DNA from: Callorhinchus milii
Lineage: Eukaryota
NCBI RefSeq assembly: GCF_018977255.1
Contig: NW_024704870.1
Location: 1-64,000 of the forward strand
Length of the DNA stretch: 64,000 bases
Reading direction: 5' to 3'
This document shows positions 14,712 through 48,677 of this stretch, in pieces. Each line of letters starts with the position of its first letter. Position 1 is the first letter of the stretch. Under the pieces are notes generated by a model. The model was given only the letters and a program-made list of their open reading frames with translations, had not been told where the DNA came from and did no database searches. A program made the translations under genes and the position numbers.

Positions 14712-14739
14712 ATGAAGCCATTTTTTGTTTACGTGCTCG
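14712..14739 (+). CDS. SRCR-Ig receptor exon 1 (signal peptide part 1, MKPFFVYVL)
   Basis: ATG at 14712, hydrophobic codons, phase-1 donor G|GTGAGT at 14740. Confidence 0.75.
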
Positions 14740-14809
14740 GTGAGTATTGTTTCTAACTGAATCACAGAGATGTTTCTCGCGTCCTGTTCGACACTCATTT
14801 TTCCTTCAT

Positions 14810-15530
14810 AGGTCCTTCGAGCCCTATATCTATGCCAAGACCAGCTTCGCTTTTCCGCTGCTCTGCAGCATTGCTGGTGTCCGCCACTGTCTCTCAGGCG
14901 GGTGGGATTTCAGCCTCTCTGCCAAAACACACTGGAACTCCATTCCATAATCACTCCATCATAGAGAGCTCAAGAGCCTGACTTCGAACAGTGTGCAAGG
15001 ACTTGCGTGGTGGGGGTGCGGAGTGTGTGGTGGATGACAGGGTGGCGGTGCAGAGTCAGTTAGCCGTAAGCCCGGTATAGAGGAAAGTTTTCAGGCGGAC
15101 TTGAAAACATGGAGAGAGAGGGCCCGCCGTGGGTTGAGAGAGAGTATTGCAGAGTTTTGCGGCGTGTAGCCTTGTAGCACGAACTCTGATGACGCGTTGG
15201 AGCGTATATGAGCAGGAAATCGGTGTCAGTCGATAGGACGCGCCGGGTGTTGGTTTGTTAAGTGAGGAGATCGGAGTGTTAGGGCCACGGATTGAATGGA
15301 TTTGACACGAGTGTGAGGATATTGAAGTCGACCCTTTCTTTGTTTGGGATCCACTGGATCTCGGGCCAGAACTGGTGAGATGGAGGTAATGAGATTTGTC
15401 CGTCTCAGTATGTGGGGGACAGAGTTCTGAATGATCTGGATCTGGTGAATTGTGAACTGGGAAGACCGGTCTGGAATGGGTTGGTACGTCTCAAGAGCTT
15501 GCTCTTCGGATCCCTGACTCTCAATCAACT
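14810..15530. mobile_element. Old L2 fragments (+ at ~14810-14990, - at ~15000-15530)
   Basis: The minus frame reads IHQIQIIQNSVPHILRRTNLITSISPVLA, homologous to the L2 ORF2 C-terminus (LQxIQNxAARIL...HITPVL). The plus piece resembles the FSxxAPxLWNSLP region. Confidence 0.6.
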
Positions 15531-16305
15531 TGTGACGTTTTTCTGACGCGAAAAGCGATGTGTCGAAGTAATTTGTTGTTGTTGTTGTCCCGGTCAAAGA
15601 GAGAGGAGCAAGGAGAGATTGGAAGTGAGAGAGAAGCTGGGAGAGTAGAGATGGGGGAATAAAGGGACAATAGAGAGGGTAGAGGAGAGAGGGGAGAAAC
15701 GATGTAGGGGAGGGAAGAGTAGAGGAGAGAGTAGAGAGGTGAAAATCGAGAGGGGATGCGAGCGAAGAGATAGGAGAGATGGGAAATAAGAGGACAGGAT
15801 AGAGATGACAGATGATAGAGGAGAGAGATGAGGAGATAGGGGAGATGAGAGGGGAAAGTGGCGATGTGGGAGGACAGACGAGAAGAGAGATTGGTGAGCA
15901 GAAAGTGGAGGAGATGGGAGAGGAGAGAGGAGATGCCAGAGCAGAGTGGATAGAAGAGCGGAGAGGGGAGACGAGAGAAGAGAGCAGAGGGAATTCCAGA
16001 TTTGTATCAGGTTTTGAGGTCGTGTTCGCTCCTCGACTGGAGCTTTCCATTCTAAACCCTTTCCCTGCTATATCTCTGACTCCGTATCGAGTCTGTGCTG
16101 GTGCTCCCACCACCACTCTAATTCGACACCCTGCCTCACTCTCTCTGTCATGTCTATGGCCTTTTTGGTGATGATTTTACATTGCTGCCCTGTAGTTAAG
16201 GAGCGAGCATTGATGGTGCGAGAGACGGCGCAGATTAGCTCACCTACTGTGAGAATTATCGTTTTAATAATTCCTGATTTGATCTTGTTTTTTTCTCTTG
16301 TACAG

Positions 16306-16341
16306 TGATATATCTGGAGAGAAAGGCGGTGGAATGTGCAG
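16306..16341 (+). CDS. SRCR-Ig receptor exon 2 (36-nt signal-peptide mini-exon, (V)IYLERKAVECA)
   Basis: Strong acceptor ttttttctcttgtacAG, donor GTCAGT, phase 1/1. It joins exon 1 to the SRCR exon in frame, giving MKPFFVYVLVIYLERKAVECAESVRLVNG. Confidence 0.65.
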
Positions 16342-17527
16342 GTCAGTGACACAATTTCATAGAAAAAAGGTGCAGTGGAAACATTAGCAGCTGAGAGTGA
16401 GACTCAGCCTCTCTTCACCCCCATGTGGGGAACAGGAGGAAAAACCATCGCATCGTCCACAGGCTACATAGGACACCTTAGTAGTCTGGTTCCGATCTTC
16501 CGCTTGTCTCTCGTGCCGTCCATTCCAGCAACGGTGACCGCACTTTTATCCACTTAGCCCCGAAAACCTGAAACACTCTTCCTCTATTGCTCCATCTTGC
16601 TACTTCATTTTCCTTCTTCAGTTGGTGTGAAGACCTTCTTATTCGCCCGTGCTTATGGATTCATGCTGCTCCTCTGCCAAGCGCTCTGGGACGCTACCGT
16701 GTTTGAGGGGCGCTGCGTAAATACGTGTTCAGTGTCTAACTCTCTTTGTGTGTAAATTGTGTAACTTGGCCTGACACAAACCAGAGCTAATAATATACTC
16801 ATAAAATGACTAAGTATTTGTCTGTATCTGTGCATCTGCCAATAGCGGAATAAACGATTGAGCTGCATCCATGAATTATACCTCAACAGAAATATCTTGC
16901 AAGGGCTAATATCATGGGCGTAGTTTCCAGGATATCCTTTAGTGGTTGAGCTATATATAACATAACATTGTTTATTTTAGCCGCTTTAATAATGTATGCA
17001 TGGTATTCTGCGACAAAGCAGCGACAGATACAATCTCACATCGTTCTCGTGTATCTGTATTAATATATTCTGCACCACGGTGGAAAACCATGGACATAAT
17101 TTTTTGGGTGAATATATATTACTATGTGAAGCAAAGTAATCTGTATAAAGTATGATAATATAAAATGTATTAATCTAATATAGACAATAATAATCCAATA
17201 TAAATTATAATATTATCAGGTATAATGCTATAATAACGTATAACAATCTAAAGTGTATTAATATAACATTTGTTTGCTTGCAAGCGTAGCTTTTACCGGT
17301 ACTGCTAGTTTTGTAATGAACAGGTACCGTAACGGGCTGTGGACTGTGCGTAACCAACAGTCACTGCAACCATTATAATGATTAATATTGTTGTTGGATT
17401 GATTACCCCCACAGACACCCACTCAATATGACAGGCGCTCTGTACATATACATTGTATCGTATTAGCCTGGTTAACCGGTAGTCAAACAGGAAATCCAGT
17501 CGTAATACTGCGTTTGATGTTTTGCAG

Positions 17528-17839
17528 AGAGTGTGAGGCTGGTGAATGGCAGCAGCCAGTGCGCCGGGAGAGCGGAGGTTTCCCATGGACGGCAATGGGG
17601 CACCGTGGATGGCTTTGGCGGCTGGGATATGAAGGACGCGGCTGTGGTGTGTAAGGAGTTTGGCTGTGGATCCGCGCTGTCAGCACTGGGAGGAGCTCAC
17701 TTTGGCAAAGGATCAGGCTTCATTGTGGCATATAATGTTCAGTGCAGAGGGAGCGAGTCTGCTCTGAGGGATTGTGCTTCAGGGACCTGGGGTCACTATT
17801 CCTGGCCACACTCCCATGATGTCGGGGTTATCTGCTCAG
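17528..17839 (+). CDS. SRCR-Ig receptor exon 3: group-B scavenger receptor cysteine-rich domain
   Basis: VRLVNGSSQCAGRAEV..GRQWGTV..GWDMKDAAVVCKEFGCG...FGKGSG.I....VQCRGSESALRDC...WG...HSHDVGVICS. Acceptor ttttgcAG, donor GTAAAT, phase 1/1. Confidence 0.95.
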
Positions 17840-17949
17840 GTAAATAACTGTGTCTCTTTCATCACCTCGTTTTTTGAGGGGCGGGGTGTGGTGGGGCCGA
17901 GGTGGTGAACATTATGCTTGTTGGGGGGGCGACGTGACCATGGAAAGGA

Positions 17950-20900
17950 ACCCGAGGGGTGGCCAGCAGGTCGGATAGAACTCGGGGTGCAGTGAGCACG
18001 TGGGAAACCACTGGGAATTGGGCAAAGGGAGGGGCTGAGGACAGTGAGTGGGGTTGTGCACAATACTGATGCGAACGAAAGTGTAATGGGCACAAGGATG
18101 GGTATTAAGCACAGGGTGAACACAGGAGTACAGCGGGTGGCTCTCGGGGGTGGGGTGAGAGGTTGTTTCAGCACGAGGTCCCGCTTTTGGCACAAAAGTG
18201 TGGAAAACGCGTTTGTGTTTGAGTGAGAATGGGTAAGAGAAGCAAAGGGGGTTGTGAGTGTAGGGGAGATGAGTAATAATAATATTAACAATAATCCTTG
18301 CATTTGATATAGCGCTTTTCGGGTCGGGAGGACGTCCCAAAGCGCTTCAGAGAACATACTGTAAAGTGAATTGACTGTATATTTGTGGGCGAACGCGGCA
18401 GCCAATTGCGCACAGCAATGTCCCACAAAGAGTCATAGATTGAAAATGACAAATTTATTATTGTCCTGTTTTGGAGGGATTATTATTAGGGCTGTGTGTG
18501 GAGTAAGGAAACTTGCCCAAGTTTTCGCCCTGACCTTCCGGGAATTGAACTCAGGTTTCTCGCTTGCAAAGCGAGTGCTCTAACCACTGAGCCACAGGAC
18601 TCCACAAGGGGTTGAGCACAATTACGGTGTGCACAGTGGGGCAAAGGACGTTTCGCGAATGGGGTTGAGCAAAGGGCAATGGACGCATGGGTGTGCAAAA
18701 GTAGGGAGCGCATTTGGATGTGTGAGCACTGGGTTTGTGGTTGAGCGTTGATGGAACACAGAAGGAGGGTTGAGCATAGGGAGGGTATTTGAACACATGT
18801 ACAAGTGTGCAGTTGCTAGGGTCTGCGCACACGATTGGTGAACCCAGTGAGGAGTTGAACAGAGGGGTTAGCACATGGGTTGAGCAACCGGAAGGAGTTG
18901 AGAATAGGGGTGCTGAGCAAAGTGGGTTTGATTACGCAGGGGTAAGCACAGTTGTTGAGCACAGTGGAGTTAAGCAAAAGGGGCTGAATACAGGCGGGAG
19001 TGCGAGCACGAGGGTAACACTGGAAGGTTGAGAACAGCAGCGTAAGCACAGAGATAGATCACAAGCTGAACAGCGAAAGGAGCCAGCACAGAGGGGTGCA
19101 AACGAGGTGAGCATAGTGGTGAGCATAGGAGATTGAGCAGTGGTGAATTAAAAATGGGATGTGAGCAAACGATGGGTGAGCAAATCATGAGGGTGAAGAG
19201 GTTGATAGCCACAGGTGGATGAGGACAGGGAAGGGTGGAGCCGAAAAGGTGAGCTCAAGGTGGTGTGAGCACAGTGTAGGGGTGAGTAAAGTGGATGCTG
19301 AGCACAGGGGCTGAGAAAAGGGGTGAGAATATGGCTCTCAGCATAAGTGAGTAATCACAGGTAGGGGGAGCAAAGGTGGGGGCTAATGGCAGTTGGGCGT
19401 GAAGAAAGAGCATGGTTAGAAAAGGCGATTGAGCAGAAGTGGGGTTTACATAGGAAGGGATATAGATTGAAGTGGCGGGAGCACCGTCGAAGGTTATAAC
19501 ACAGCGAGAGGCGCTGAGCACAGAGGTGTATGAACTATGGGGCCGGGGCACATGTAATGGGTGGATGAGGAAAAGAGTTGAGCACGGGCAATGAGCACAA
19601 GTGGGAAGTGAGCACAGGCGTTGAGCAAAGGGGGAACAGCGTGGGGGATAGAGGGTGATCAGTGCGAATTGAGCACAGTGGGTTGGCATGGGGATGCATA
19701 GGTGTTTGAGCACAGGCGGGTGAGCATATGATGGGATGAGCACAGGGTTGTTTGAGAAAAGATTTGTCCGAGCACAGAGGTGTGAGTAAAAGGGGATGAG
19801 CACAGGTGAGTGAGCAAAGGAAGGGGGGAGCACAGAGTGCGTTATCACAGAGTGTGGGAGCAGGGGTGGGTGTGGACTAGGGAGTGAGCAAAGAGAGCAT
19901 TCTGAACATACGAAGCGTGAAAAGGACAGGGTGGTGAGCAGAGGAACTGAAAACATGATGTCAGCAAAGCTAGAATGGCGAGAATGAGTAAAGCAGGGTA
20001 AGCAAACAACAACGTAAACAAAATTGCATTTAACGAGCATCCTTCAGGTCGGGAGAACGTCCCAAGGCGCTGGCCAGTCAGGGTCAAGAACAGAACATGG
20101 GGACGAGTGGCGTAGGGATGACGGAAGGCATAGAGTTTGTAGGTCGACGGAAAGCAGCATCGAAGAGGACGGTATTGAGACCGGCCTTGAAGGAGAGAAG
20201 GGAGGAAACGAGCCGAAGGTAGTGTGGGATGGAGTTCCAGAGAGTGGGAGCCGAGAGGCTGAAAAAGGCTGTTCGGGTGGGAGACATCATAATAATAATC
20301 CTAATAATCCTTCCATTTCTTGCAGCGCTTTTCAAGTCTTCTAGAGGTCTCAAAGCGCTTTCACGGACTAAACTGTAAATTGAATTGACAGGCGTGCCAC
20401 ACAGAGTCGTGGATTGAAAATGGTCTACTATTGTTTTTTTTGGAAAAATAAAAAAAAGTGGGGTTGAGCACAGGGCCTGAGAACGGGGTCGCGGGGGTTG
20501 AGCACAGGGGCGTTCAAGAGAGGAAGGTGAGCACAGATTGGGAGCATAGAGGGGTGTTGAGAACAGGAGATGGTGAGCCCAGTGGTGTGTGAGCTCAATG
20601 GGATGATCAATGGTTGTGAGCACAGGAGGGAGCGTCCACCGTGGGGGTTGAGCAGAGGAGGCCGAGAACGGGGAGGAAGTGAAAACCGTGTGTTGATCAC
20701 AGGAGGTGTGAAGACAGGTAGGCAGGTTTGAACGGGGTGTGCATGGAGAGTGGATGAGCGGGGGTTGTAAACGAAATGGGTGTGCACAGGGTTGAGTACA
20801 GGAGGTTGTCCTCAATTCGGTGAGTACAGGAGCGTGGAGGACAACGGGGTAACGCAGGGCGTGAGCACAGTAGGGTAGAAAGGGGCTGAAGCCAAGTTTG

Positions 20901-23830
20901 TGAGCACAAGATTGTGAGCATGGTGTTGGTCGTGAACGCCTTGGATGGGTTGAAAGCAGGGACTTGTTTAAAGAAGTGTGAGAACAGGGTTTTGAGATAC
21001 ATCTGTTAAGCACAGGGGCTTGAGCACAGGGAAGGGATAAGCATATGGACAGGGAAGCAAAGAGGGGGAGAGCACAAGAAGGGGAACACAGTGGGAGGTG
21101 TGAGCACAGAGGCGTGAGCACAGGGGTGAGCAAAACGAGGGTAACCACAGGGTTGTCAGGACAGTGTAAAGCAAGAACAGTGGGTCGAGCATATCGCCTA
21201 CGCAGAGAGGCGGAGCAAATCGGGATGAGCACAAGAGAATGAGCACAGGTTGTGTCGGTGGAGAAACAGTTGGGGATGGACGCAGGGAGTTAGCACGGAG
21301 AAGAGAGCACAGGGTGTGGTCAGCACAGGGGCGTAAGCAGCGGGGGTGTGAGTACAGGGTGTGATAACATGGGGTTGAGCTTAGGCGAAGTGAGCACGGG
21401 GTGGTGAGTACAGGGGTTGAGCATCGGGGAGCACAGGAGGCAGGGGGAGCATAGTGGTTGGGGTGAGCACATGGGGCGGTGTGTGCACAGGGGGTGAGGA
21501 AAGGGGTTTCCACACGGGGCTGAGCGCTGTGGCGTGAGCATAGGAGTGCGTGAACAAGTGGCTAAGCCCATAGTAGAGAATAGAGAGGGTGTAGCAAAGG
21601 GGAAGAAAACAGGATGGGGAATTTCGCGGGGATAGCACAGCGGTAGTGAACAGGTTAGAGAATACAGCGTGAAAGCACAGGTGGTGTGCAGAGTGTGTGC
21701 ATGAGCTCAGTGGAATTAGCACAGGTGGGGGTGCTCACACTGGTTGTTGAGCACTGGGGGCTGAGAACGAGGAGGGGTAAAAAGAGTGGGGAGGACAGGC
21801 GGGTTCAACACAGTTAGGGGGTTTGAGCAGGGTGTGGTGGGCAAGGTGGTTAATCATGGAGGGTGCATGAGCATAGGCGGGGGTTATGCGCATACGAAAC
21901 TGGCAGCAAAGAACGTTCGAGCAAAGGGGTGATGAGCACAGGGTAATGAAAATTGTGTGAACACTGTAGAGGGGAACAGAGATTGCTGAGCAATCGGCGA
22001 TGAACACAGGAAGGTGAGCACAAAGGAATTGAACACAGGATATGAGCCAAGGTGAAGGGTAAGTAAAGCCGCGTAGGACATATGGGGGTTGATTCCACAG
22101 GTGTGAGGATAGGTTTCAATGAGCTCAGGTGGGGGGGGGGGTGGGGGGAATGAGAAAAGATGGTTTGAGAAAAAGGCGGTTAGCGCAGGGTGAATGAGCA
22201 CAGTGCCTTGAGCAAAGCGGTGAGAGTAACCACAGCGTGGATAAAGCGAGGTAAGCAAAGGCGGGTGAGCACAGGAGGCTGAGAATATGGCGGGTGAGAG
22301 CAGTAGGGCTGCGCAACAACAACAAAAACACCAACATTGTATTTGTGTAGCTGGGGGAGCACAGGGGGTTAAGAGCATGGGGGGTGAGTACAGGACTTGA
22401 GAACTGGGGAAGCGCACAGGGTGTTGAACACACGTGAGGAGAGAGTGGTTGAGCAAAATTGGGAGTAAGCATTAGTGGGAGTGAATATGGGGTGGGGGAG
22501 TGAGCACAGGGTGTTGAGTACGATGGGTGGTGGGGTTGGACGAGGACAAGGGAGTGAGCGCAGATGTAAGCACAGGGAGTTGTGTACATCGGGCTGAGCA
22601 GCAGGATATTAGAACCAGGTAGGTGAGCAGGGTGAGTTGAGCAGAGTGGGTACTGCTGAGTTGGTTGAGTACAGGGGAAAGTTAAGCACAGAGGGGATCA
22701 CCGCAGAGCAGCACAGGTGCGGTGAGCTCAATAGAGTGAACAGTGGGGTGAGCACGTGGGGGGGGGGGTGGGAATGGTGTGAGGACTTTGAGCACACGAA
22801 GAAGGGTGAGCACGTGGGGGTGGTGGGGATGGTGTGGGGACTTTGAGCACACGAAGTAAGGTGAGCAGAGTGGGGGCAAAACGGGCAGCATAGGTGGGGA
22901 GAGAACTGTGGATTGAGCACGCGGGCGGGTTTGATCAGCACATCTCAAAAGTGGAAGGAGAGCTGTTGTGAAATAAGTGGGTTTAATGCAGCGCGGTGAG
23001 CATATGGGGAGGTAGAACATGGGGATGAGGATAGGTGTAGGGTGAGTCCAAGGGGTTGAGCACAGCGGAGGTGAGCAAATGTGGGCAAGCAAAGGATAGG
23101 GAAGGTCATGGGTGGTAGCATATTGGGTGAGCACAGAAGGTGACCGAAGGTTTGTGTACACAGGGATGGTGAGCACCGGGGTGTGAGCACAGGCGATTGT
23201 ACACAGGGTGTGGATCGCATTACGAGAGCACAGTGTGGGTGAACAAAGCGCGGTGAGCACCAGTTGGGTGGGCACAGGTTGCTCAGCAAAGCGGTGTGAT
23301 CGCAGGGAGGGGAGCACCGGGGGATGATAACATGGGAGTGTAAGCTCAGAGGTTTGGACACAAGGTTGGGAGCACAGGGCAGTGTAAGCACATGGATGTG
23401 AGCATAGAGGTGTGATGATAGCGGGTTGAGAGCGGTGGGGGTGAGAAAAGTTATTTGAGCATAGAGAGGGGGAGCACAGGAAGAGGGGGAGCACAGAATG
23501 GAGAGCACAGGACGGGTGAGCATAGCACGCGTGTGAGCATTGGAGAAGGAAAGCACAGGGTTGATGAGCAAAGCGGTTTTGGTCAGCGTAGTCGTTGAGC
23601 ACAATGGGTGTGAGCACATGCGGTTGAGCAGATGGGGAAGCAGGGGTGGTGGGAAGCACAGTGTGGAGGAGCACAGGGGGCGTTAGCTCATGTTGGTGCT
23701 AAGCACAGGGGAAGCACAGGGTGGGGGACTCAGCACAGGGAGTGGGTGAGAAGACTAGTGTAAGCATAGGGTGGGAGCAAACCGGGATGAAAGCACAGTG
23801 GGCTGATAGTACATAGTGTTGAGCACATTG
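17950..23830. repeat. Degenerate G-rich satellite with a (T)GAGCACAG(G/T)G core, inside the SRCR-Ig1 intron
   Basis: gagcaca-type cores recur every few tens of bp with strong G skew on +. Interrupted by a SINE (18274-18605) and L2/SINE fragments (~20005-20460). Confidence 0.9.
18274..18605 (-). mobile_element. Young full-length tRNA(Ala)-Deu-L2 SINE
   Basis: Near-identical reverse complement of the 3248-3573 copy. Confidence 0.9.
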
Positions 23831-23839
23831 AGGATGATC

Positions 23840-24860
23840 AACAACAACAAAATTCCATTTTCGACTGCCTTTCACGTCAGGAGGACCTCCCAAGGCGCTG
23901 TACAGTCAGGTGTGGGGACGCAAACATGGGGGTGAAGTGGTGTAGGGGTGACGGAAGACAGAGGTGACGGGGGGAGAGGAGACCAAGGGCACGGTCGAAA
24001 GAAGGGTCTTGAGACAACTCGTTCCACCTCCCCTTGGAAAGGAAGGGGAGGTTGGAGATGGGCCGGTAGCTTCATAGCTGCGACGCATCAAGGGAGGGTT
24101 GTTTTAAGGTGGGAGTGATGGTGGCAGTTTTTAAGGGAATGGGAATAGAGCCAGAGGAGAGGGACAGGTTGACGATGTCTGTGATATGTGGGGCAAGGAG
24201 GTGGAGCTGGGAGATGTGGAGTGGGGATGGGGACAAGGGAGCAGGTGGTAGATTTCAGGGAGAGGATGCGTTTGGTGACAGAGGATGGGGAAACGGGTAC
24301 GAAGGTGTGTAGGGGAGGATGGGTAGGAGTCGTAGTGTGGGAAGGAAGGGGTGGGTGGTGGGTGGATGTTGGAGGGGAAGTGACCGCGGAGCATATTCCC
24401 TTGATGTTGGATTCAAGGAAATCCAGCATCTCCTCGCAGTGAAGGTTGGAGGAGAGGACCTGCGCGGGGTGGCGTGGGGGCGAAGGAGGAGTTGGGATGT
24501 GGTAGAGAACAGTAGCCTGGAGTTATCCTTCGCCTCCAGGATTATCCTGGAGTAGAAGTACGATTTGGCCGAGGCTAGCGTGGAGCGGTAGATTTTCAGG
24601 AGGTCCAGACAGATTTGTCGGTGGACCGTTAGGCCAGATTTCACCCAGGTGCGTTCAGCGGCCCGCACCTGGCTCTTCAGTGAGCGGAGGTGGGTGGTGA
24701 ACCAGGGGGAGGAGCGAGAGTAGGTGACAGTACGGGAGGTGTTAGGGGCAAGAGTGTCAAGTGTGGAGGAGAGGGTGTTGCGGAGGAAGAGGGGTCGGTG
24801 AGGGTTGAAGGCCAGAGGGAGAGGAGTTCAGAGGACTACAAGGGAGGGACATAGCATAGG
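23840..24860 (-). mobile_element. Internally deleted L2 LINE (3' tail fused to the pre-RT part of ORF2)
   Basis: Tail at ~23840-24010. It joins directly to RPISNLPF/ERVV-type pre-RT sequence and LRSLKSQVRAAER..SGLTVHRQ...SRIILEAK, homologous to 34700-35500. Confidence 0.8.
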
Positions 24861-25279
24861 GGGCGTGGCTGAGGGGCCTGGGAAAGCGCTGAGCAAATTG
24901 TGAGGGGCTAATCACAATGAGAGTGTCTGAGAACAGTGAGAAGTATTTAGCACAAGTGGAGGGCCTGAGTTCGGGAGGACGGGCAGACACAGCGGAAGGG
25001 GATAAGCACAATGACGCCGAGCTCACACTGATCACGAGGTCACACTGACCCGAGCTCAAACTGACCCCGAGCTCACAGACAAGTGTTTCATTTCAGCAGA
25101 AACCCAGCGTCCAATGAAGACCCGGATTAAAACTGTCAACATTTCTTCATTGTATTGAACTTCGAAAGAAACAGTCTCACAGGTTGAGGCTGGGCTCACT
25201 GTCGATCGTTATGATCTGTGTCACAGCACAGATCTGTGCGAGTGTTTGTTACGTTATCTTTACTGTGTTTTTATTCCAG

Positions 25280-25564
25280 ATCCGCTCCATAAACCCAACG
25301 TATCCCTGAAGCCAGACTCCCGTGTGGTGGTGAAGGGGGAAAGCGCTGAGATCTCATGTTCTGGGGATTATCCTGGCAGCAACTTCTCTTTATACAGAGA
25401 CGGCGAGTTTATAGCATCACAATCAGCTCCAGAGAATAGCAATACAGCAACATTCACCCCTTCGGTGATCATTGCAGGAAATTACTGGTGCAAATATGTT
25501 GCACACATAGACGGCCGAGAGTTCAAATCACCAGCAAGCGAGCGAGTGAGAATCTCTGTGTGGG
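25280..25564 (+). CDS. SRCR-Ig receptor exon 4: C2-type Ig domain 1
   Basis: (D)PLHKPNVSLKPDSRVVVKGESAEISCSGDYPGSNFSLYRDG...ATF...AGNYWCKY...SERVRISVW. Acceptor ttattccAG, donor GTAAGA, phase 1/1. Confidence 0.92.
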
Positions 25565-26494
25565 GTAAGAGCGAGTGTCTGGACTGTCTTGCTAATGACT
25601 ACTCACTGCCCCCTTGTATCCAATCACAGTGAACACAGCCTGTTAACCCCATCCACACTTGTGTTCCACACGCTCTGTGACACGAGTCTCTCCCCATTCC
25701 TCCCTCACTCCACACATTCTATTGATCCTTCCCTCCCTTCTCCCCTCACACTCCGTTCTACGCACCCCCACATCCTTTATTACACACGCCCTCCCTCCCG
25801 CAGCCTTCCTCCCAAAACTCGGTCCTCACTTCCTCGCACATCTTATATTCCCCTCTCCCCAACTTCATCCCTTTCTCCATATCCTCTATTCCACTCTCAA
25901 CCACTCCCTATCTCCCACACTCTCTACTCCCTCTCCGTCACTCTTTCGCTCCTCCATTCCACACCCCCTGATGCTACATCCCTCCACATACTCGATCCCT
26001 CACGTCCCCTGCCTCACCAAATCTCTATTCCCCTCAACCTCCAATGAAGGTCCGGCTTCCTATTGAATGTATCTAGAATATATCTGATTCCCCGCCAGCA
26101 TTAGGCAACAAGTCCCTCCATCTCACTCCCCTCAGTGTGACGTAATTACTGCTAACTTCTCCGTTTGACCCGCTGGTTGCGATCTTATCCTTTTGTTTAA
26201 AAAGACGTCTCAAGTTAACACGAGCAGTTCAGAATGAGTTCCCGTCCTCCCGTTCGTGCCTGGTGCTGTGTGCTACATCTGTCCACTGCACCTAACCCCG
26301 AACCATTGCTCCGCCTCTGTCTGTGTAAAGAAACACGAACCGGGGTTTGCCCTAAACCTGACCCTCAACCCTTCCACCTTGTCCCGACGCCACCTCAACG
26401 TTTAGAAACAAGCAAATGGTCATTTTTACTCAAACTTGACCTGTGTTCATATCACGAGTGTCTGTGAGATTATATTTATGTGTTTTAATTCCAG

Positions 26495-26779
26495 ATCCGA
26501 TACGAAAACCCACCATTTCCCTGATGCCAGATTCGTTGGTGTTTGTTAGAGGGGAAAACGCTGCGATCTCGTGTTCTGGGAATTATCCTGGAAGCAATTA
26601 TTCTTTGCATCGAGAAAGCGAATTTGTGACATCAAAACCAGCTCCAGAAAATAACAAAACGGCCACATTCACCCCGTCGGAGATCATTGCAGGAAACTAC
26701 ACGTGTAAATATACAACAAATATAGACGGACGAGATTTCACATCAGCAGAGAGCAATCGAGTCGGAATCTCTGTGTGGG
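26495..26779 (+). CDS. SRCR-Ig receptor exon 5: C2-type Ig domain 2
   Basis: (D)PIRKPTISLMPD...GENAAISCSGNYPGSNYSLHRE...AGNYTCKY...GISVW. Acceptor aattccAG, donor GTAAGA, 285 nt. Confidence 0.92.
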
Positions 26780-27806
26780 GTAAGATCTGGAGCCTGGACT
26801 CTCTCACCAATGGTCAGTCACTGCCCCCTAGTGTCCAGTCACCTCGATTACAGCACACCTCCGCCCCATCCTGCACTGTCTTTATCGAACCATAGAATGA
26901 TACAGCCCAGAAGGAGGCAATTCAGTCCATCATATCAGTGTCGACTCTTTGAAAAGGACCACTCGATTCAATCCCAATCCCCCGTTTCTCTTCTATCTCT
27001 GGAAACTTTGCATCCCCAAATAATTATCTTCTTTCACTCGATTTTTTGACAAGCGTCAGTCCCCGTTCCTACCTTCTTTCCTTCAGCTGACTACCTATTT
27101 TCCTACTACAACAAGCTCCCTCATCCTCACTTCCTCCAACTACCTCTATGCCACCCTCTGTCCCACATTTCTCATAAACTCCATACCATAATATACTCCC
27201 ACACACTCATTGACTCCCACACCCTTTATGACTCCCAATCCGACTGTTTCTCTGTCCCAAACCCTGGCTCCCTCCCAAATTTTCTATTGCTCTCTCCCTC
27301 ATTCTATCCCACAAGCCGTCACCCTTCAAAACCCTCTCTTCTCCTATCCGTCATGCGAAGGTCTCACTACGTGTTGAATGTATTTACACTATCTGATTAA
27401 ATTCTAGTTTCAGGCAGTGAGTTCCATCATATCAATTCCCACTGTGTGAAGCCCCTGCTTCTCAATTCTTTGTTGGATGCCCTGTTCTAAAGTGCTATTT
27501 TAAAAAACGGCTGAAGATCGCACGCGAGGATCAGACTGAAATCCCGTCCTCCCTTTCCAGGCTGGAACTCTAAGTTTCCCAGCCCTCTTTGGTCACTCCG
27601 CTCCCAGCGATTCCTCCCCCTCCCTCTGTGAAAAAAAAACCCTACCTTGTGTCTGTCCTGTGCCTGTCACTCAACCCCTCCCAATCGTTCTGACGCCTAC
27701 TCAAGACTGAGAATCAAGCAAATGGCAACAATTACTGTGACCTGAAGTGTTTTCATCCCACAGAGCGAGTCTGTGTGAGATTGTCTTTGCATTGTTTGAA
27801 TTCCAG

Positions 27807-28094
27807 ATCCGCTGCAGAAACCCAACATTTCCCTCAAGCCAGATTCCCGGGTATTTATGAGCGGAGAAAGCGCTGAGATCACGTGTTCTGGGAATTATCA
27901 TGGCAGCGATTTCTTTTTATACAGAGACGACGTGTTAATCACATCAATAACCGCTCCTGTGTGTAAAAACACTGCCACATTCACCCCATCGGAGACCAAG
28001 GCAGGAAACTACACGTGTATATATATTACATATATAAACGGACGACAATTCACACCACCAGCGAGCGAGCGAGTGGGAATTTCTTTGTCGGCGG
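27807..28094 (+). CDS. SRCR-Ig receptor exon 6: C2-type Ig domain 3
   Basis: (D)PLQKPNISLKPDSRVFMSGESAEITCSGNYHGSDFFLYRD...PVCKNTATF...AGNYTCIY...GISLSA. Acceptor aattccAG, donor GTAAGA. Confidence 0.92.
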
Positions 28095-28965
28095 GTAAGA
28101 GCTCAATAAAATCTCACAAATTTATCTGTTTGCATTTTGACCATTTAGAATATCTTCTGTTGTAACCGCACTTTGCACCAGCGATCATATTTGCATATTA
28201 TCTCCTGATGTTGGCTGGAGTGTTTGACCCAGGCGGAAACCCATCCCCGCGATGAAAGTTTCCAAATCCTAACTCCCGAGCGATCCCCACACGGCTGAAC
28301 ACTCCGTCCTTTTCCCAGAGGGAGAGACGCGAGTGTTCAACATAATCGTCGTCACATTTAGTGTTTCTTTTTTTCTTCGAGGCAATATTTGTTCAGCCCA
28401 GGTTTTCCTGTTACATATCAGCTGTCACTTATTCAACCATACCACACAGCTGGTCATTCAGCACAAACTAGTACACAAACCCTTCCTCTCTAGCGAGGAT
28501 CACCCGATCGAGTTGACTCCAGAAATTAAGTCAAGTCGAAGAATCCGAGCTCCTAGTGACCAATCTTCTACTCAATCTCTTGCCGATGGGACAGGCTGGA
28601 CTGTTGTGCCATCAGCAGTACCCTGCAATATTGCAGATCCGGCTGGCTCTAGGATTCGACTGGAGACCACCATCAAGTTTTTGACTCGAGTGCGATCTTT
28701 CACAGCTTGGCAGGTCACAGGCGCAGAACCCAAAGAGAATCTGCCCAGCTCCCCTTCCCAGAGATAGGGAGCGAGAGATTTTTCTCTTGAAGACAGACTA
28801 TGGGAACTTGGATTTTTTCATTGCAACAGACAAACCTTTGGTTTCCATAGCACTTTCATATCAAGATGTGAACAAACCTGAGTTTGCTCTTAAAAATGAT
28901 GAACTATTCCCCCATATTAGCTCTTCAAAGTCGTCAAATTACTGTTTCTCAATTTCTCTCTCCAG

Positions 28966-29064
28966 CAAACTGTACCGAGAAGCATACTATCGGACTGGCT
29001 TTGGGGACTTTCACCGCGATCGTGATCACTTTGTTTATAGTGGGATTCTGCGTGTATAAGAAAG
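28966..29064 (+). CDS. SRCR-Ig receptor exon 7: short stalk plus transmembrane segment
   Basis: (A)NCTEKHTIGLALGTFTAIVITLFIVGFCVYKK. Acceptor tttctctctccAG, donor GTAAGT, phase 1/1. Confidence 0.88.
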
Positions 29065-30390
29065 GTAAGTGGACAGTAATGCCAGTGCATATAGTTTACA
29101 ATTAATGGGAATAAAGGAAGTGAATTGACAGCAATAGAACTAACCACTGTGTATTGATTTTTTCTGTTGTATCCGTGAGGGCAGATGGGGACCTGAGCAC
29201 AAAGATACCAAATCAGTGTTCTGTGTTTAACAACTCATTTATTATTGGGAGAGATCAGATAGCATCATGATTCCGGGTTAGAAAGACATGTCACCGAATA
29301 TATCAGCACAATCGGTAATGGGCAGTTCCATACTTAATTTAGGCTACATGACATTATAGGCTGTACTCGAGGATCATCTTGGTTTGTAAGCCCCTGGAAT
29401 TCCTTTCCTCACTACCTTCGCCTCGTCCTCTCTCTCCCTATTTTCAAGTCTGAGCTGAACACAGTTGTTTTCTACCGCACCTTTAGTCACCTTCCTCCCC
29501 CTCCCCTTGGCTCGGCCCCTGGATCCGTTTCTGTGAATCGCTCAGAGACGACGTCCGGCCTGGAATGCGCTATATAAATCCAAGTTACTGTTTTTGTGCT
29601 TTGTTGCTCGAGATAATTGTTAGCTGTACAATGTAGAATCTACTGTAGTTTGAAACTATTGGTTTAATGTTATGTTTTTCCTTCTGTACCAGCGGTAAGA
29701 CCGTTATACTGAGGTCCTAACTGCGTGAACAGGGGGCGCCACAGATTGCAGCAGCATTCGAAAATATAATAGAGATTCTCTCAGTATCAATATCAATCAG
29801 TATCAATAACAACAATACCCAATAATACCCGAAATAAAATTGGTCACTCACTCCATGGATCTTTGTGGGACATGGTGATCAGGCATTGTTTTAAATAGAA
29901 GGATCAGTATTTTGTTATTTTATCTTGGGCGAATCCAATGCCGGAGAAGACTATCTGCAACGACTTTGCTCAGTTACATTCTGCACCAAAAAGCTCATCA
30001 TATTCCATTATAGTCAGCAGATTGTGATTCACAACCAAATGCAATAATATAATAAAATATAATATAGAGTGTATAATAGAATAAACTATAATAATAAATT
30101 GCATCGTGCATTAAGCTGAATAGTAGTAATAATATTAGGCACGGTTCAAATCATGGGTCCTGAGGGGTGAGGGTGGGAGCGGGACTTCTGGGATGTATTT
30201 GGAGAGGGCAGGGCGGAGTTGCTGAAGGGAATCCACCTATGGCAGTAGTGGTTGGAGTGGACAGCTATTGCTAACCATCCCTGTGAAGGGCTTTGACGCC
30301 GGATGTAATGCGGTTATTATCCGTAAAACCACAAAAGTATACAACCAGTGCTAATGACTATTTGACATTTATTACATTTGGTACTTGCAG

Positions 30391-30417
30391 GTAAACAGAA
30401 CAGTCTAAGTGGGATAG
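30391..30417 (+). CDS. SRCR-Ig receptor exon 8: 27-nt cytoplasmic mini-exon ((G)KQNSLSGI)
   Basis: Acceptor ggtacttgcAG, donor GTGAGT, phase 1/1, open frame. Confidence 0.6.
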
Positions 30418-31960
30418 GTGAGTACATGTCCTATACAATCAATGTTCTCCCCTTCCTGCCTTTGCAGGTGCTTCCACCCCCACTGGAGCTCACTATACTT
30501 ATCCCATTCCTGCTCTCACCCCACCGTGTCTGTGCGGCTTCTCGCACCCCACTGGAACTCTCCACTGTAATCCTATTCGTGCTCTTATTCTGAACTGATG
30601 CTCACTCCCACATTCATCGACAAGACGTGGAGAGCAGACAGACACCGGGGGCAAAGATTCCTCCCAATCAGCACCTGTTACCCTGCAAGACAATTCCTTA
30701 ACGGGTAGGATGTTCCTAACACGACAAGCAGTAGAAGCTTGACAGACACACTTCCCAGTGGCAAGCTATGTGGTTTTAGCAGATGAGGCCCCAGCAGTTT
30801 TCCCAATGTACAATTTGAGGACGCCAAACCCTGATTCTCGGCCAGGCTTTGTTTTTTGCCCGTGGTAATTAGTTTGGCAGAGATACTGCACATTCATTAG
30901 AAACGCAGGAATTTCCATGTATAGGATGCATGACTGAAACTCATCGTCTTGCGTGGATACTTGTAACCGTGGTGATATGTTTCAACAAAATCGAATATCT
31001 GGCTAAACTCCGCAATCCAGCTTTTGAAAACACCGTCAGACTTTTCTATTTTTAAAACATCCTGGTGCTTTTTTCCAACGGTAGCACCAGAGACAGAAAT
31101 AGCACAGAAGGCAGCCATTCAAACCCAAGTGTCTGAGCTGTTCATTCAAGTGTAATTCTGTCAGTGCCATTTCCCCGTCCTTCCCGTCAGATGAGAGACA
31201 ATAGTTGGTGGTTAGCCTGTGACAAGCCCAGTTCTGAGTTCTTTAATTATCATCAGTAAAACAGCAGTGAATTCATCGCTCACTCCTCTCTATGCTTTTG
31301 CTCTCAGGACCGTAACCACAGTTGGCGGCCCACAAACCAGCAACATCACATGAGAGGGAATGGCTTCCTAGTTTTGAGCAAAGAGGGAAAGGAGCTGATC
31401 ACAATTGATCCTGGTCAGCCGTGTCCCCGAGTACTGCACACCCATCCGTGATCATGATCCTCCCACAAACAAGAGGCCATTGACCTCTTCGCCTCTCTGT
31501 CTCGCTCTGTCTCTCGCCTTTTCTCTTAGTTTGCGTTTCTGTTTGTCTCCTCTCTGCTTCCCTCTTATTTGGGTAAATCTGTGTGTCTGTCGCTCTCCTG
31601 TCTGCATGTCTGTCTGTGTGTCTTTCTCTGTGCTTGTTTGTGTATTTGTCTGGCTGCAAGAGAGTCAGTGTGTCTGCCTTAATATCGCTTCTCCCAAATT
31701 GGTACAGTTTAAATCCTTCAGATGAGATGACAGATCGAGGTCCCGTCTGCTTTTTCATTAAAGTTGCCGCGTCGCTTTTCAAAAAAGTTAATTTCTCTCT
31801 CCCGGACAACAATCCCTCTCTCGCACACAATCCAGAAGAAAACATTCTTCACACATTGTACTTGTGTTTGTGTGGAAGATGGCCACGGAGGCCTTTCGTG
31901 TTTCACTGACAAAACAGACTGTGACCGCTCCACGTCGTCAATCCTTTGAAACGTTTTCAG

Positions 31961-32262: not shown

Positions 32263-33504
32263 CCCAAATCAACCGTGTGTCGGCCTGGCTCAGCCCAGCT
32301 CAGAGGCTGTATCAATTTCGCTCAGGCTAACATGGCTCAACCCAGTTCAAGCGCGTTGTCTCTCTGGCTCAGCCGGCAGCACTGAGCCACAGAGACAAAG
32401 AGCTTGAGCTTAAAAAAGAGCTTGAGCTTGAAAGTCATGCGTTAATCCCCAATGTCGGGACCTTGACAATACTGAGAAAGAGAAGGGAAAATCTCACATT
32501 GTCCTGGCCGAATTTAATTGTTCGCGCATTTCATCAAAATAATAATTATCCTGGCCTTCGATTTAGATCATTTTGCATGATAGGGATATCTTAAGAGCCT
32601 CACAGGATTTATTGCATAGAGGAGTCACAATTGCATAGAGTTTCTGTGCACAATTTGACTGCTGCTTTAGGCTATGGTTATAAAGTTCCTGCAATTGATA
32701 ATACATTTTCTCACCGTGAAAAGCATGTGTGCTTGTGCATGTCTGGCGGTCTGTCTGTTCATGTGTTTGTGTCTGTGTGAGTGGGTCGGTGTCTGCCTGT
32801 TCAACAGTGCTTGTGTGTGTATGTGATTGTGTGTCTGTGTGTGTATCTGCGTATGTTTAAATTCTTCATTCAAACAATGCCATTCCCCTCAGAGGGAACT
32901 ATTAAATGCAAGATGTCCCACTGATCTTTAGCAGATGTGTTAATTGTTGGCCTTTGTGTAAGACGCTGATATCTTCTGCGCCAATCTGGCATGAGGAAAT
33001 ATGAATGAGCCAGGTTGTGAGGAAGATATTGCAGTCTACGCCGCAGACAGAATTTAGGGCCGCGGCTAATAGCCATGAGCTGCTTTCTCTTCCTGTTCTG
33101 CCAACTCATCATCACCCTTATTCATTTCCATCTTCAGTCTGACTTCAATGGGGCGCTCACATCATCTGTCACCCTGACCCAGATAGAGAATGGTTTCGAG
33201 ATTGAGATCGAATGAGTGAGGGAGAGAATGAGTAAGAGAAACAGAGACTGAGTTAGTCTGTGTGAGAGAGAAAGATAAAAAGAGCCTGAGTGAGAGGAGA
33301 GACTGAGAGTGAGAGGTGGAGTGAGAGATTGAGAGACGGAATGAGACTGAATGAGTGAGACTGAGTGACAGGGAGTAATTGAATGAGACTGATCGAGAGA
33401 CTGAGTGAGAGAGAGAAAGTGAGGGAGAGAGAGAGAGAAAAAATGACTGCAACCCAGACTGAGTGAGAGAGAAAGTGGGTGAGTGAGAGTGAAAGAGAGA
33501 GAGA

Positions 33505-38923: not shown

Positions 38924-39808
38924 GTAAGTGTTTACAGTCGCGGAGCACTGAGCTAATCGTATAGCGATTCTGATTATGTAACACATGCATACATTGATGA
39001 GTGGCCTTTTCCTGGACCTGACAGCCTGGCTCAGTTGGTTGTGCTGGGGTTGCCTCGAGTTGTAGAAAACTGTAATCATTCCGAGAAGACGTTAACTCGA
39101 GTGCAGAATTTCAGTAGACTACTCTGCTGGAGGTGAGCTCCTTTCCATGAGCAGTAAACTGACACTCCCCATCCCCACTGTTTATGATAATATGGATATT
39201 GCAGATAGATTGCATGGCCCATCCTCTGCGTTTGCTAAATATTTTACGCAAAATGTTAGAGCAGAAGGACCGAGATCAGCTTTGTTTGACGAACTTGTTA
39301 CCATTGCATTGCAAATCAGATGAGATGGGAGAGGTTTGGCCTTTTTTCAAGGCGAAAGATCTTTCAAGACTGGAGCTAATAGATGTGTTTCTAATTATAA
39401 AATGATTGATGAAGAAAGCGTAAATGGTCCTTTGTTTGATGGGGAGTGCATAAACACGATACAGTGACTTCAAAGGGAATAGGTGAGAATGGAGTAGAGT
39501 GAGCGATGAGTCGGGGAAGGGGATTAACGTTATGTAAAATGACTGCCACAGAATGGTTGGACCGAGTGGGCTATGTCTGTGCTGTGCAGGTTTTGTAAGA
39601 CTTTGAAAGAGCTTGGGAAAGAGCAGAGTCTTTTCAGCCCAGTCCAGCCTGGTCTGGTTGAGGAGTAAATTATAGTAAGATTTTCATGTATCGACCCAAG
39701 ATCTAATTCCATTTATTTTGCACAGTGACTTCTTAAGTAGCAATACACTTGAATTCAAAACATTGCAATTTTACTTTGTTCAAACTGTATTCTCTCTTTC
39801 TCTTCCAG

Positions 39809-47942: not shown

Positions 47943-48244
47943 GTGCAGACTGAGTGCACAGTGATACATAGCGGAGTCTGTCAGCCGCAGGTCGGCGATG
48001 GTTAAATCGCTGATTTTCTTGGCAGTGTCAAGAGAAGCAGAAATGTGATCTCCAGTGGGGTTTCCTCCCTCTCCTGAGGGGTTTCTGTGGAGGAGGTATT
48101 TCAGTGTCTCCCCAGGGGACTGTCGGTACCAGGAGACGCTGAAGTCCTGTCCGCAGAATCCTGAATATTGGCAATGTACATTTATCGTCTCACCAGCAAA
48201 AGCAGTTTGTTCAGGCGGTGACTGGGAAACTGTAAACCTCGATC
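47943..48244 (-). CDS. Leaderless supporting TCR Vdelta of NAR-TCR cassette A (intact), 23-RSS at 47904-47942
   Basis: SRFTVSQSPP...VHCQYSGFCGQDFSVSWYRQ...DSAMYHCALSL, with an extra Cys in CDR1. Acceptor ccttctgcAG, RSS CACAGTG-23-ACAATAACC. The nearest upstream donor is the NAR J, not a leader exon. Confidence 0.92.
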
Positions 48245-48677
48245 CTGCAGAAGGCACATTAAAAGTCACATATTATCATGGAATTATGAAATGTTAACCA
48301 CAGAAGTAGGCAATTCGACCCATTTTGTTTGAGCCAGCTTTCTGAAGAGCTGTCCCACCAATTCAACTCCCACGAGTTTTTCACATTACCTTTTACTTTA
48401 TTCCCCTTCTGAAATTTATTATCGAATCTGCTTCCAGCTCCCTTTCACAGATTGCAAATAAATCCTCATCATCTACCCTCGTGTTGTTTAATCGTACAAA
48501 TAGGTTCTCTAATTACCGAACCACTGGCGAGTGGAAACATTTTAATCGGTCAACTGGTTTGTTGAAATGGCTCAGTTGTATATATTTGGGAGTAGTGACT
48601 TCGAATAAAGCATTTTACTAATTCATGTGAATAAAATTGATGTGAACTGCAAATTTGCAGATGTATTTCTCACTTAC

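What the first reader, a model, noticed from the sequence alone, without database searches (positions are those of the whole stretch)
14712..30417. Chimeric SRCR + 3xIg + TM receptor gene next to the TCR alpha/delta / NAR-TCR V array
Seen: eight exons splice in frame through phase-1 GT-AG introns into leader-SRCR-Ig-Ig-Ig-stalk-TM-cytoplasmic (453 codons up to exon 8, no stop). Known: mammalian CD163/WC1/SCART/CD5/CD6 ectodomains are SRCR-only, and WC1 is a gamma-delta TCR co-receptor; LRC/FcR-type receptors are Ig-only. Inference: this is a hybrid immune receptor, possibly a T-cell co-receptor or pattern sensor, lying about 14 kb from the last V segment. Automated pipelines would probably mislabel it as DMBT1/CD163-like.
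Basis: partly seen in the sequence, partly recalled or inferred. Interest (0 to 1): 0.85.

Follow-up and report, generated by a model that had tools for sequence, protein, structure and literature searches.

The report
Tail-less SRCR-Ig shark immune receptor gene
The window holds a real elephant-shark gene for a membrane receptor that joins one scavenger-receptor (SRCR) domain to three LILR/KIR-like Ig domains, one copy of a multigene family found from chimaeras to a caecilian and so far named only by annotation pipelines, and this copy has lost the inhibitory tail its relatives carry.

Summary
Eight + strand exons (14712-30417) join through phase-1 GT-AG introns into exactly 453 codons: split leader with a 36-nt mini-exon, SRCR, three Ig domains, transmembrane segment, start of the tail.

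Exon 8 is one base shorter than in an ITIM-bearing paralogue, so exon 9 reads Gly-Pro-stop. The ORF is 455 codons with a 13-residue tail. The former ITIM exons downstream are decayed. This copy is therefore a tail-less receptor (my preference, about 0.5) or a young pseudogene (about 0.35).

The organism is Callorhinchus milii, judged from best hits. The Ig domains are LRC-type (PirB, LILR, KIR, NKp46). The SRCR lacks the C2-C7 cysteine pair.

The architecture is not unique. 38 of the 150 best Ig relatives also carry SRCR domains, in sharks, rays, bowfin, teleosts, coelacanth and a caecilian. All have pipeline names, and I found no paper on them. Mouse FCRLS is a published Ig+SRCR chimera, so "FcR-type receptors are Ig-only" is wrong.

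No transcript of this copy was seen. Nothing supports a functional TCR link. This scan already found the family on other DNA of this genome.

The parts
14712..14739 (+). Exon 1: start codon and first half of the signal peptide (MKPFFVYVL), donor GTGAGT, ends in phase 1
   Evidence: Homologous to the N-termini of paralogue models and to the P0285 leader.
16306..16341 (+). Exon 2: 36-nt mini-exon, second half of the signal peptide (VIYLERKAVECA)
   Evidence: Matches FLERK.VE.A in annotated paralogues and is 67% identical to P0285 residues 63-74. A paralogue RNA contig in run X6 joins this exon to the SRCR exon (joint 16342>17529).
17528..17839 (+). Exon 3: one complete SRCR domain. It has six cysteines and lacks the C2-C7 pair (WGTVD in place of WGTVC).
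   Evidence: Pfam PF00530 at E=1.6e-25, covering model positions 1-100 of 100. PDB hits are CD163, PIT54, CD5L, CD6 and DMBT1. Cysteine pattern.
25280..25564 (+). Exon 4: Ig domain 1 (C2/LRC type)
   Evidence: Pfam Ig_3 and Ig_2. The profile's best PDB hits are PirB, LILRB1/2, KIR3DL1 and NKp46. dN/dS against the L001 paralogue is 0.25.
26495..26779 (+). Exon 5: Ig domain 2
   Evidence: dN/dS 0.27.
27807..28094 (+). Exon 6: Ig domain 3
   Evidence: dN/dS 0.63.
28966..29064 (+). Exon 7: short stalk plus transmembrane segment (no charged residue in the membrane span) plus KK stop-transfer
   Evidence: The Kyte-Doolittle maximum is at residues 419-441. Homologous to the TM exons of paralogues.
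30391..30417 (+). Exon 8: first cytoplasmic exon (GKQNSLSGI). It is 27 nt where the ITIM-bearing paralogue has 28 nt, a 1-nt deletion that shifts the frame.
   Evidence: DNA alignment with L001. A DNA contig of run X1 covers 29838-30600 with no gap (table 8, record 8).
31308..31315 (+). Exon 9 as now read: Gly-Pro-TAA, the end of the 455-codon ORF. In the ancestral frame it encoded the stretch leading into ITIM 1, and its old donor GT is now GA.
32963..33057 (+). Remnant of the last ITIM exon. The ITIM-2 tyrosine is now Cys, there is an in-frame TGA and a 9-nt deletion, and ITIM 3 is degraded (AVYAAD).
   Evidence: tblastn with paralogue tails, DNA alignment with L001, translation. Identity to paralogue tails is 0.48-0.58, against 0.65-0.76 among the paralogues.

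Best explanation
This is a single nine-exon gene of the elephant-shark SRCR/LRC-Ig receptor family. It encodes a type I membrane protein: a split signal peptide, one SRCR domain at the tip, three LILR/KIR-like Ig domains, a stalk, an uncharged transmembrane helix, and a cytoplasmic stub of only 13 residues.

Its relatives end in three ITIM-like tyrosine motifs, so they are inhibitory receptors. In this copy a 1-nt deletion in the first cytoplasmic exon shifted the frame, and the ITIM exons have since decayed. That much is shown.

The rest is inferred. The extracellular part has stayed open and has diverged no faster than other family lineages, while the tail rotted. The gene is therefore most likely kept as a tail-less, non-inhibitory variant. 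It would bind whatever the SRCR/Ig ectodomain binds but could not recruit phosphatases. It would then act as a decoy or competitor of its inhibitory paralogues, or signal only through a partner chain that remains unknown.

Its position 15-17 kb from antigen-receptor V segments is treated as genomic neighbourhood, not mechanism.
For: Gene structure and domains.

Same leader, SRCR, Ig and TM order in annotated Callorhinchus paralogues at 57-69% identity.

Three ITIM-like motifs in the paralogue tails.

Lesions in this copy: frameshift, loss of the old donor, decay of the ITIM exon, and a stop either through exon 9 or by skipping it.

Evidence for constraint on the ectodomain:
- All 16 splice dinucleotides are intact.
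- The paired cysteines of every domain are kept.
- dN/dS against the L001 paralogue is 0.43 overall, and 0.25 and 0.27 in Ig1 and Ig2.
- The ectodomain is as close to other lineages (0.57-0.69) as they are to each other, while the tail remnant is clearly further (0.48-0.58 against 0.65-0.76).
- Under neutral substitution alone, the ORF would stay open with probability 0.10, 0.016 and 0.0045 at 5%, 10% and 14% divergence.

Short-tailed members (P0001, P0020) and a member with an Arg in its TM (P0285) exist in the family, so it has paired-receptor diversity.
Against: No RNA contig matching this copy at 99% or better was seen on its exons in four RNA runs, while paralogue-like contigs were seen.

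No protein of this gene turned up among annotated proteins in two database searches that should have admitted it.

The TM has no charged residue, so the usual route to an activating receptor is missing.

dN/dS is 0.63-0.70 in the SRCR and Ig3 exons. The pairwise value cannot be assigned to this lineage alone.

The date of the frameshift is estimated from only about 100-200 nt of tail.
Confidence: 0.5

Rival explanations
1. It is a young pseudogene. An inhibitory SRCR-Ig-ITIM receptor copy was disabled by the frameshift in exon 8, and its ectodomain has simply not yet picked up a stop.
For: Frameshift, lost donor, in-frame stop and lost ITIM tyrosines. No exact-match transcripts in RNA runs that do show paralogues. 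Not found among annotated proteins. No charged TM residue to compensate. Multigene immune families carry many pseudogenes (general knowledge).
Against: The tail carries several independent lesions and is more diverged than tails are between lineages, so the disabling event looks old. Over a comparable time a neutral 1.36-kb ORF with 16 splice dinucleotides would rarely stay intact (0.016 at 10% divergence, before counting indels). Ig1 and Ig2 have dN/dS of about 0.26.
Confidence: 0.35
2. It is a T-cell (gamma-delta / NAR-TCR) co-receptor or pattern sensor functionally coupled to the neighbouring TCR V array, analogous to WC1/SCART.
For: V-set segments with RSS-like heptamers lie at 47958-59135 on the minus strand. 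Earlier notes of this scan report other family members among TCR V segments; I did not check those notes.
Against: The ectodomain is not SRCR-only. The tail has no signalling motif. A GPCR ORF lies between the gene and the V segments. Three other family loci show no V segment in 47-76 kb. There are no expression data at all for this copy.
Confidence: 0.05
3. These are two separate genes: an SRCR gene (exons 1-3) and an Ig-TM gene (exons 4-9), joined only on paper.
For: A 7.4-kb repeat-rich intron separates the SRCR exon from Ig1. No read of this copy spans that junction. Ig-only members of the family exist, for example P0281.
Against: The phases match. The only leader exons lie upstream of the SRCR exon. 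Pipeline protein models of several paralogues, including an Ensembl-derived UniProt entry, run leader-SRCR-Ig in one chain. Examples are P0057, P0163, P0164 and P0158. The L001 paralogue has the same exon order and spacing.
Confidence: 0.05

Closest known systems
Callorhinchus milii predicted SRCR-Ig-ITIM receptors (LOC103173597 = P0198, LOC103191288 = P0002/P0163, LOC103172721 = P0012/P0244/P0158). These are pipeline models with no paper found.
   Same: Same leader with mini-exon, same 6-Cys SRCR, same LRC-type Ig exons, homologous TM exon, and 57-69% ectodomain identity.
   Different: Those models end in three ITIM-like motifs (VTYATV, IIYANL, PVYATV). This copy stops 13 residues after the membrane because of a 1-nt deletion. 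It has one SRCR, where some members have two or more.
LILR / PIR / KIR / NKp46 receptors of the mammalian leukocyte receptor complex
   Same: The Ig-domain profile hits PirB (1.3e-11), LILRB2, LILRB1, KIR3DL1 and NKp46 first. There is one phase-1 exon per Ig domain. The signal peptide is split, with a 36-nt second exon; that this is the KIR/LILR rule is my own knowledge and I could not confirm it in a paper. The family mixes ITIM-bearing, short-tailed and charged-TM members.
   Different: No mammalian LRC receptor has an SRCR domain. Orthology and LRC synteny are untested. This copy has neither an ITIM nor a charged TM.
[quoted passage not shown]
   Same: It is a published chimera of Ig-like receptor domains with a group B SRCR domain, thought to have arisen by recombination between neighbouring genes (PMC7940838).
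   Different: FCRLS has FCRL-type Ig domains, a C-terminal SRCR, no TM (it is secreted) and the FcR-type 21-bp second signal exon (PMC7940838, PMC2413239). Here the SRCR is N-terminal, the Ig domains are LRC-type, the mini-exon is 36 nt and the protein is membrane-anchored. This looks like an independent invention.
WC1 / SCART / CD163 / DMBT1 group B SRCR proteins
   Same: The SRCR exon aligns end to end with CD163, CD5L, CD6 and DMBT1 domains. Chondrichthyan multi-SRCR proteins score nearly as high as family members.
   Different: Those ectodomains are SRCR-only with 8-Cys domains. Here a single 6-Cys SRCR caps an Ig stalk.
SRCR+Ig mosaic membrane proteins predicted in sharks, rays, bowfin, teleosts, coelacanth and a caecilian
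   Same: Signal peptide followed directly by SRCR, related Ig domains (30-36% identity over SRCR plus 3 Ig) and a TM.
   Different: They are much larger (700-3200 aa, some perhaps merged models). SRCR and Ig domains often alternate. Their SRCRs have 8 Cys. Their tails have no canonical ITIM. Whether there was one ancient fusion or repeated exon shuffling is open. The window's SRCR is closer to chondrichthyan SRCR-only proteins than to their SRCRs.

Membership tests
SRCR superfamily, group B | SRCR domain of about 100-110 residues encoded by one exon | tested here: met
   A 312-nt exon. Pfam PF00530 at E=1.6e-25, covering model positions 1-100 of 100.
SRCR superfamily, group B | Eight conserved cysteines (C1-C4, C2-C7, C3-C8, C5-C6) | tested here: not met
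   Six cysteines. C2 (WGTVD, not WGTVC) and C7 are both absent. The same holds in all Callorhinchus family members checked, while other species' SRCR-Ig proteins mostly have eight.
LRC-type Ig-like receptors (LILR/PIR/KIR-like) | Ig domains most similar to LILR/PIR/KIR/NCR1 rather than to FcR/FCRL domains | tested here: met
   The top PDB profile hits are PirB, LILRB2, LILRB1, KIR3DL1, NKp46 and LILRA. No FcR or FCRL chain is among the 60 best.
LRC-type Ig-like receptors (LILR/PIR/KIR-like) | Split signal peptide with a 36-bp second exon, and phase-1 exons with one Ig domain each | tested here: met
   36-nt exon 2 and all junctions in phase 1. The 36-bp rule for KIR/LILR is from my own knowledge. 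The contrasting 21-bp rule for FcR/FCRL is in PMC7940838 and PMC2413239.
LRC-type Ig-like receptors (LILR/PIR/KIR-like) | Signalling module: cytoplasmic ITIM(s), or a charged TM residue for adaptor pairing | tested here: not met
   13-residue tail without tyrosine and an uncharged TM. ITIM exons are present only as decayed remnants.
LRC-type Ig-like receptors (LILR/PIR/KIR-like) | Orthology or synteny with the leukocyte receptor complex | not testable with these tools
   Only a 64-kb window and three short loci were available. There were no LRC marker genes in them.
FCRLS | FCRL-type Ig domains, 21-bp second signal exon, C-terminal SRCR, no TM | tested here: not met
   LRC-type Ig domains, a 36-nt mini-exon, an N-terminal SRCR and a TM exon. 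Definition taken from PMC7940838.
WC1/SCART/CD163 co-receptor type | Ectodomain made of SRCR repeats only, and a cytoplasmic tail with tyrosine/serine signalling motifs | tested here: not met
   One SRCR followed by three Ig domains. The tail is 13 residues with no tyrosine.
Elephant-shark SRCR-Ig-ITIM receptor family (pipeline-annotated) | Homologous leader with mini-exon, 6-Cys SRCR, LRC-type Ig exons, homologous TM exon | tested here: met
   57-69% ectodomain identity to P0198, P0164, P0002 and P0244. Exon-by-exon colinearity with the L001 paralogue.
Elephant-shark SRCR-Ig-ITIM receptor family (pipeline-annotated) | Cytoplasmic tail with three ITIM-like motifs | tested here: not met
   The 1-nt deletion in exon 8 leads to Gly-Pro-stop, and the ITIM exons are decayed.

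The most novel reading that the evidence does not exclude
SRCR-headed LRC-type receptors are an old, undescribed paired-receptor system of non-amniote jawed vertebrates, with inhibitory, charged-TM and tail-less members. In the elephant shark they are physically interleaved with TCR-delta / NAR-TCR V segments. Their expression or retention would then be coupled to T-cell receptor rearrangement, making them a WC1-like co-receptor or pattern-sensor arm of gamma-delta-type T cells. On this reading, the copy here would be a selected, non-inhibitory partner of the ITIM forms.
Probability: 0.07. Interest if true: 0.85.

Novelty: new variant of a known kind. Interest (0 to 1): 0.4.

Why it matters
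Receptor families that pair inhibitory with non-inhibitory members (KIR, LILR, PIR, CHIR, LITR) are central to innate recognition, but almost nothing is described for cartilaginous fishes.

This gene shows an LRC-like Ig receptor scaffold capped by a scavenger-receptor domain. That combination is known in mammals only from the unrelated, secreted FCRLS. It belongs to a family present from chimaeras to a caecilian, and databases label that family misleadingly as DMBT1-like, CD163-like or IGSF1-like.

This copy also records how an inhibitory receptor loses its ITIM tail while keeping its ectodomain, which is the first step in making a decoy or activating partner.

The value is mainly for annotation and for the comparative immunology of the LRC. 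It does not, on present evidence, reveal a new TCR co-receptor.

Tried and rejected
RNA support. Two run searches found only DNA-like holders and same-species RNA runs with no words of this gene. Laying four runs on 25200-30600 and four on 14600-17900 gave only paralogue-like contigs at 90-95% likeness and no joint of this copy. The SRCR>Ig1 junction (a 7.4-kb intron) could not be spanned within the 6000-letter limit.

Searching for this gene's own annotated protein. It was not among the hits. The closest hit was 67% identical.

Second SRCR, mini-SRCR or charged-TM exon in the window. None was found by tblastn with the model or with P0285.

Alternative route to an ITIM. Skipping exon 9 also ends in a stop.

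Cross-species synteny with TCR V segments. Heptranchias (L002) and two Callorhinchus loci (L001, L003) show no V segment. The flanks are only 10 kb and my V scan is a simple motif search.

Literature. Nine searches found no paper on fish SRCR-Ig receptors and no citable source for the 36-bp LRC signal-exon rule.

Recent recombination with the P0285 locus was rejected. There is no extended DNA similarity outside repeats.

Full report
OBSERVATION. On the + strand I recovered eight exons, all with AG/GT borders and all junctions in phase 1:
- exon 1, 14712-14739
- exon 2, 16306-16341
- exon 3, 17528-17839
- exon 4, 25280-25564
- exon 5, 26495-26779
- exon 6, 27807-28094
- exon 7, 28966-29064
- exon 8, 30391-30417

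Joined, they give 1360 nt, which is 453 codons plus one base, with no stop.

Pfam scores exon 3 as a full SRCR domain at E=1.6e-25. Exons 4-6 score as Ig_2/Ig_3 domains and are 64-66% identical to each other. Exon 7 holds the only strong hydrophobic span after the leader, at residues 419-441. tblastn of the model against the window finds no second copy and no further SRCR exon.

ORGANISM AND FAMILY. A profile of the three Ig exons was searched against 1.84 billion representative proteins. It gave 794 hits at E of 1e-3 or better. The best are Callorhinchus milii predicted proteins, so the window is elephant-shark DNA, judged by best hits. The closest proteins are 57-69% identical over the ectodomain. 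None is this gene's own product.

The N-termini of several pipeline models read M-ESLF..-FLERK.VE.A-..VRLVNG, the same two-exon leader followed directly by the SRCR. Models such as P0057, P0158, P0163 and P0164 run leader-SRCR-Ig in one chain. The paralogue in locus L001 (scaffold MU249884.1, assembly GCA_018977255.1) has the same exon order: SRCR, Ig, Ig, Ig, TM and four cytoplasmic exons. This is the main argument that the SRCR and Ig exons here form one gene.

WHAT KIND OF DOMAINS. The Ig profile hits PirB (1.3e-11), LILRB2, LILRB1, KIR3DL1, NKp46 and LILRA chains first in the PDB, and no FcR or FCRL chain among the 60 best. Together with the 36-nt second signal exon, this places the Ig part with the LRC type rather than the FcR type. 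The 36-bp KIR/LILR rule is my own knowledge. The 21-bp rule for FcR/FCRL is in PMC7940838 and PMC2413239.

The SRCR aligns end to end with CD163, PIT54, CD5L, CD6 and DMBT1 domains but has only six cysteines. Both partners of the C2-C7 disulfide are missing. All Callorhinchus family members I checked share this, while the SRCR-Ig proteins of other species mostly keep eight.

Paralogue proteins end in a tail with three ITIM-like motifs..SNVTYATV....DADIIYANL.. and ..GPVYATVRV.

In the window, exon 8 aligns with the paralogue's first cytoplasmic exon but is 27 nt instead of 28, GGG-ATAG against GGGGAAAG. A DNA contig of run X1 covers 29838-30600 without a gap, though it may come from the same animal as the assembly.

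The next exon has its acceptor AG at 31306-31307 and is then read as GGA CCG TAA. The ORF is therefore 455 codons and ends ..CVYKKGKQNSLSGIGP.

In the ancestral frame the same exon still spells RTVTTVGGPQTSNIT, but its donor GT has become GA. The last ITIM exon survives at 32963-33057 with several lesions: the ITIM-2 tyrosine is changed to Cys, there is an in-frame TGA and a 9-nt deletion, and ITIM 3 is degraded. Skipping exon 9 also ends in that TGA. The TM has no charged residue. Neither a charged-TM exon nor a mini-SRCR like those of P0285 exists in the window. Whatever this gene does, it cannot signal through ITIMs.

ALIVE OR DEAD? Four points favour a maintained gene.
1. All 16 splice dinucleotides and all paired cysteines are intact.
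2. dN/dS against the L001 paralogue is 0.43 overall: 0.25 in Ig1, 0.27 in Ig2, 0.63 in Ig3 and 0.70 in the SRCR.
3. The ectodomain is as similar to other lineages (0.57-0.69) as those lineages are to each other (0.56-0.69). The tail remnant is clearly more distant (0.48-0.58 against 0.65-0.76) and carries several independent lesions, so the tail seems to have been unconstrained for a long time.
4. In a simulation of neutral substitutions, the ORF stays open with probability 0.10 at 5% divergence, 0.016 at 10% and 0.0045 at 14%, before counting indels.

Against a maintained gene, four RNA runs of the species hold paralogue-like contigs on the Ig and SRCR exons. These include a contig that joins the mini-exon to the SRCR exon (joint 16342>17529 in X6). 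They hold none matching this copy. No annotated protein of this gene was found. The estimate of when the tail died rests on few sites.

I put a maintained tail-less receptor at about 0.5 and a young pseudogene at about 0.35. The family also contains short-tailed members (P0001, P0020) and a member with an Arg in its TM, P0285. The leader and SRCR of P0285 are the closest to this gene's (74% SRCR identity). A mix of inhibitory, activating-type and tail-less forms is therefore plausible. There is no sign of recent recombination with the P0285 locus.

HOW SPECIAL IS THE ARCHITECTURE? It is not unique. 38 of the 150 best Ig relatives carry one or more SRCR domains. They come from:
- Narcine, Pristis
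- Scyliorhinus, Chiloscyllium/Hemiscyllium, Heptranchias, Cetorhinus
- Amia
- Sardina, Salminus, Leuresthes, Engraulis
- Latimeria
- the caecilian Geotrypetes

Most begin with a signal peptide followed directly by an SRCR and have a TM. All carry pipeline names: uncharacterized, IGSF1-like, DMBT1-like, M130-like or WC1.1-like.

The window's SRCR scores higher against chondrichthyan SRCR-only proteins (130-142 bits) than against the SRCRs of other species' SRCR-Ig proteins (70-94 bits). Repeated exon shuffling is thus as likely as one ancient fusion.

In the literature I found no description of these fish proteins. Mammalian FCRLS is a published Ig+SRCR chimera (PMC7940838). It differs in every structural respect, having FCRL-type Ig domains, a C-terminal SRCR, secretion rather than a TM, and a 21-bp signal exon.

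This scan has already reported members of the same family on other pieces of this genome. New here are the single-SRCR form and the loss of the ITIM tail.

TCR NEIGHBOURHOOD. Three V-set ORFs followed by heptamer-like motifs lie on the minus strand at 47958-48173, 54148-54366 and 58920-59135. Their best PDB matches are VH-like, with V-delta and TCR-mu among the hits. They are 15-17 kb from the gene's end. An intronless class A GPCR ORF (39718-40722) lies in between.

Two other Callorhinchus loci of the family and one Heptranchias locus show no V segment in 47-76 kb. I found nothing that makes the adjacency more than neighbourhood. With no expression data, a T-cell co-receptor role is unsupported (about 0.05).

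VERDICT. This is a real, correctly assembled chimeric receptor gene. It is a new variant within the LRC-like Ig receptors, a member of a pipeline-annotated but apparently undescribed SRCR-Ig family, and in this copy it lacks its inhibitory tail. It is of moderate interest for comparative immunology and annotation. The striking readings (a unique hybrid, a TCR co-receptor) are not supported.

Noticed in passing
window 39718-40722 (+): Intronless 334-codon ORF with a rhodopsin-family 7TM domain (Pfam 7tm_1, 1.1e-13). Its nearest solved relative is only GPR139 (2.4e-5). It lies between the receptor gene and the V segments.
   Followed up: partly
window 47958-48173, 54148-54366, 58920-59135 (all minus strand): Three V-set gene segments, each followed within 12-15 nt by a CAC.G.G heptamer. 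Two are near-identical (CQYSGFCGQDFSVSWYRQ...). Their best PDB matches are VH-like, with V-delta1 and TCR-mu among them.
   Followed up: partly
window 18000-24900 and 33500-36400: Long G-rich, strongly skewed low-complexity tracts (GC skew up to +0.5) fill intron 3 and the region after the tail remnants. Parts are 86-92% identical to tracts in L001 and L003. The NCBI model P0198 translates such a tract as a bogus 380-residue N-terminus.
   Followed up: partly
window 29363-29905, 16487-16819, 15377-15487: Short stretches inside introns with very high contig depth in every DNA and RNA run and many loose ends. They look like high-copy interspersed repeats (SINE-like), not exons.
   Followed up: no
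P0285 / L003 (Callorhinchus scaffold MU249866.1): The relative with the closest leader and SRCR has SRCR + a shortened second SRCR + one Ig + a TM containing Arg (..NVARLIVVITLPL..). That is an activating-type member of the same family.
   Followed up: partly
window 17528-17839 and Callorhinchus proteins P0002, P0057, P0158, P0198: All elephant-shark family SRCR domains checked lack both cysteines of the C2-C7 disulfide, while SRCR-Ig proteins of sharks, rays, teleosts, coelacanth and the caecilian mostly keep eight. This looks like a lineage-specific 6-Cys SRCR variant that differs from group A.
   Followed up: partly
P0004, P0244 (Callorhinchus isoform models): Some paralogue isoforms end ..SNVTCE*, which is read-through of the donor of the ITIM-1 exon into its intron. 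ITIM-less short-tail products may therefore also arise by alternative processing in intact family members.
   Followed up: no
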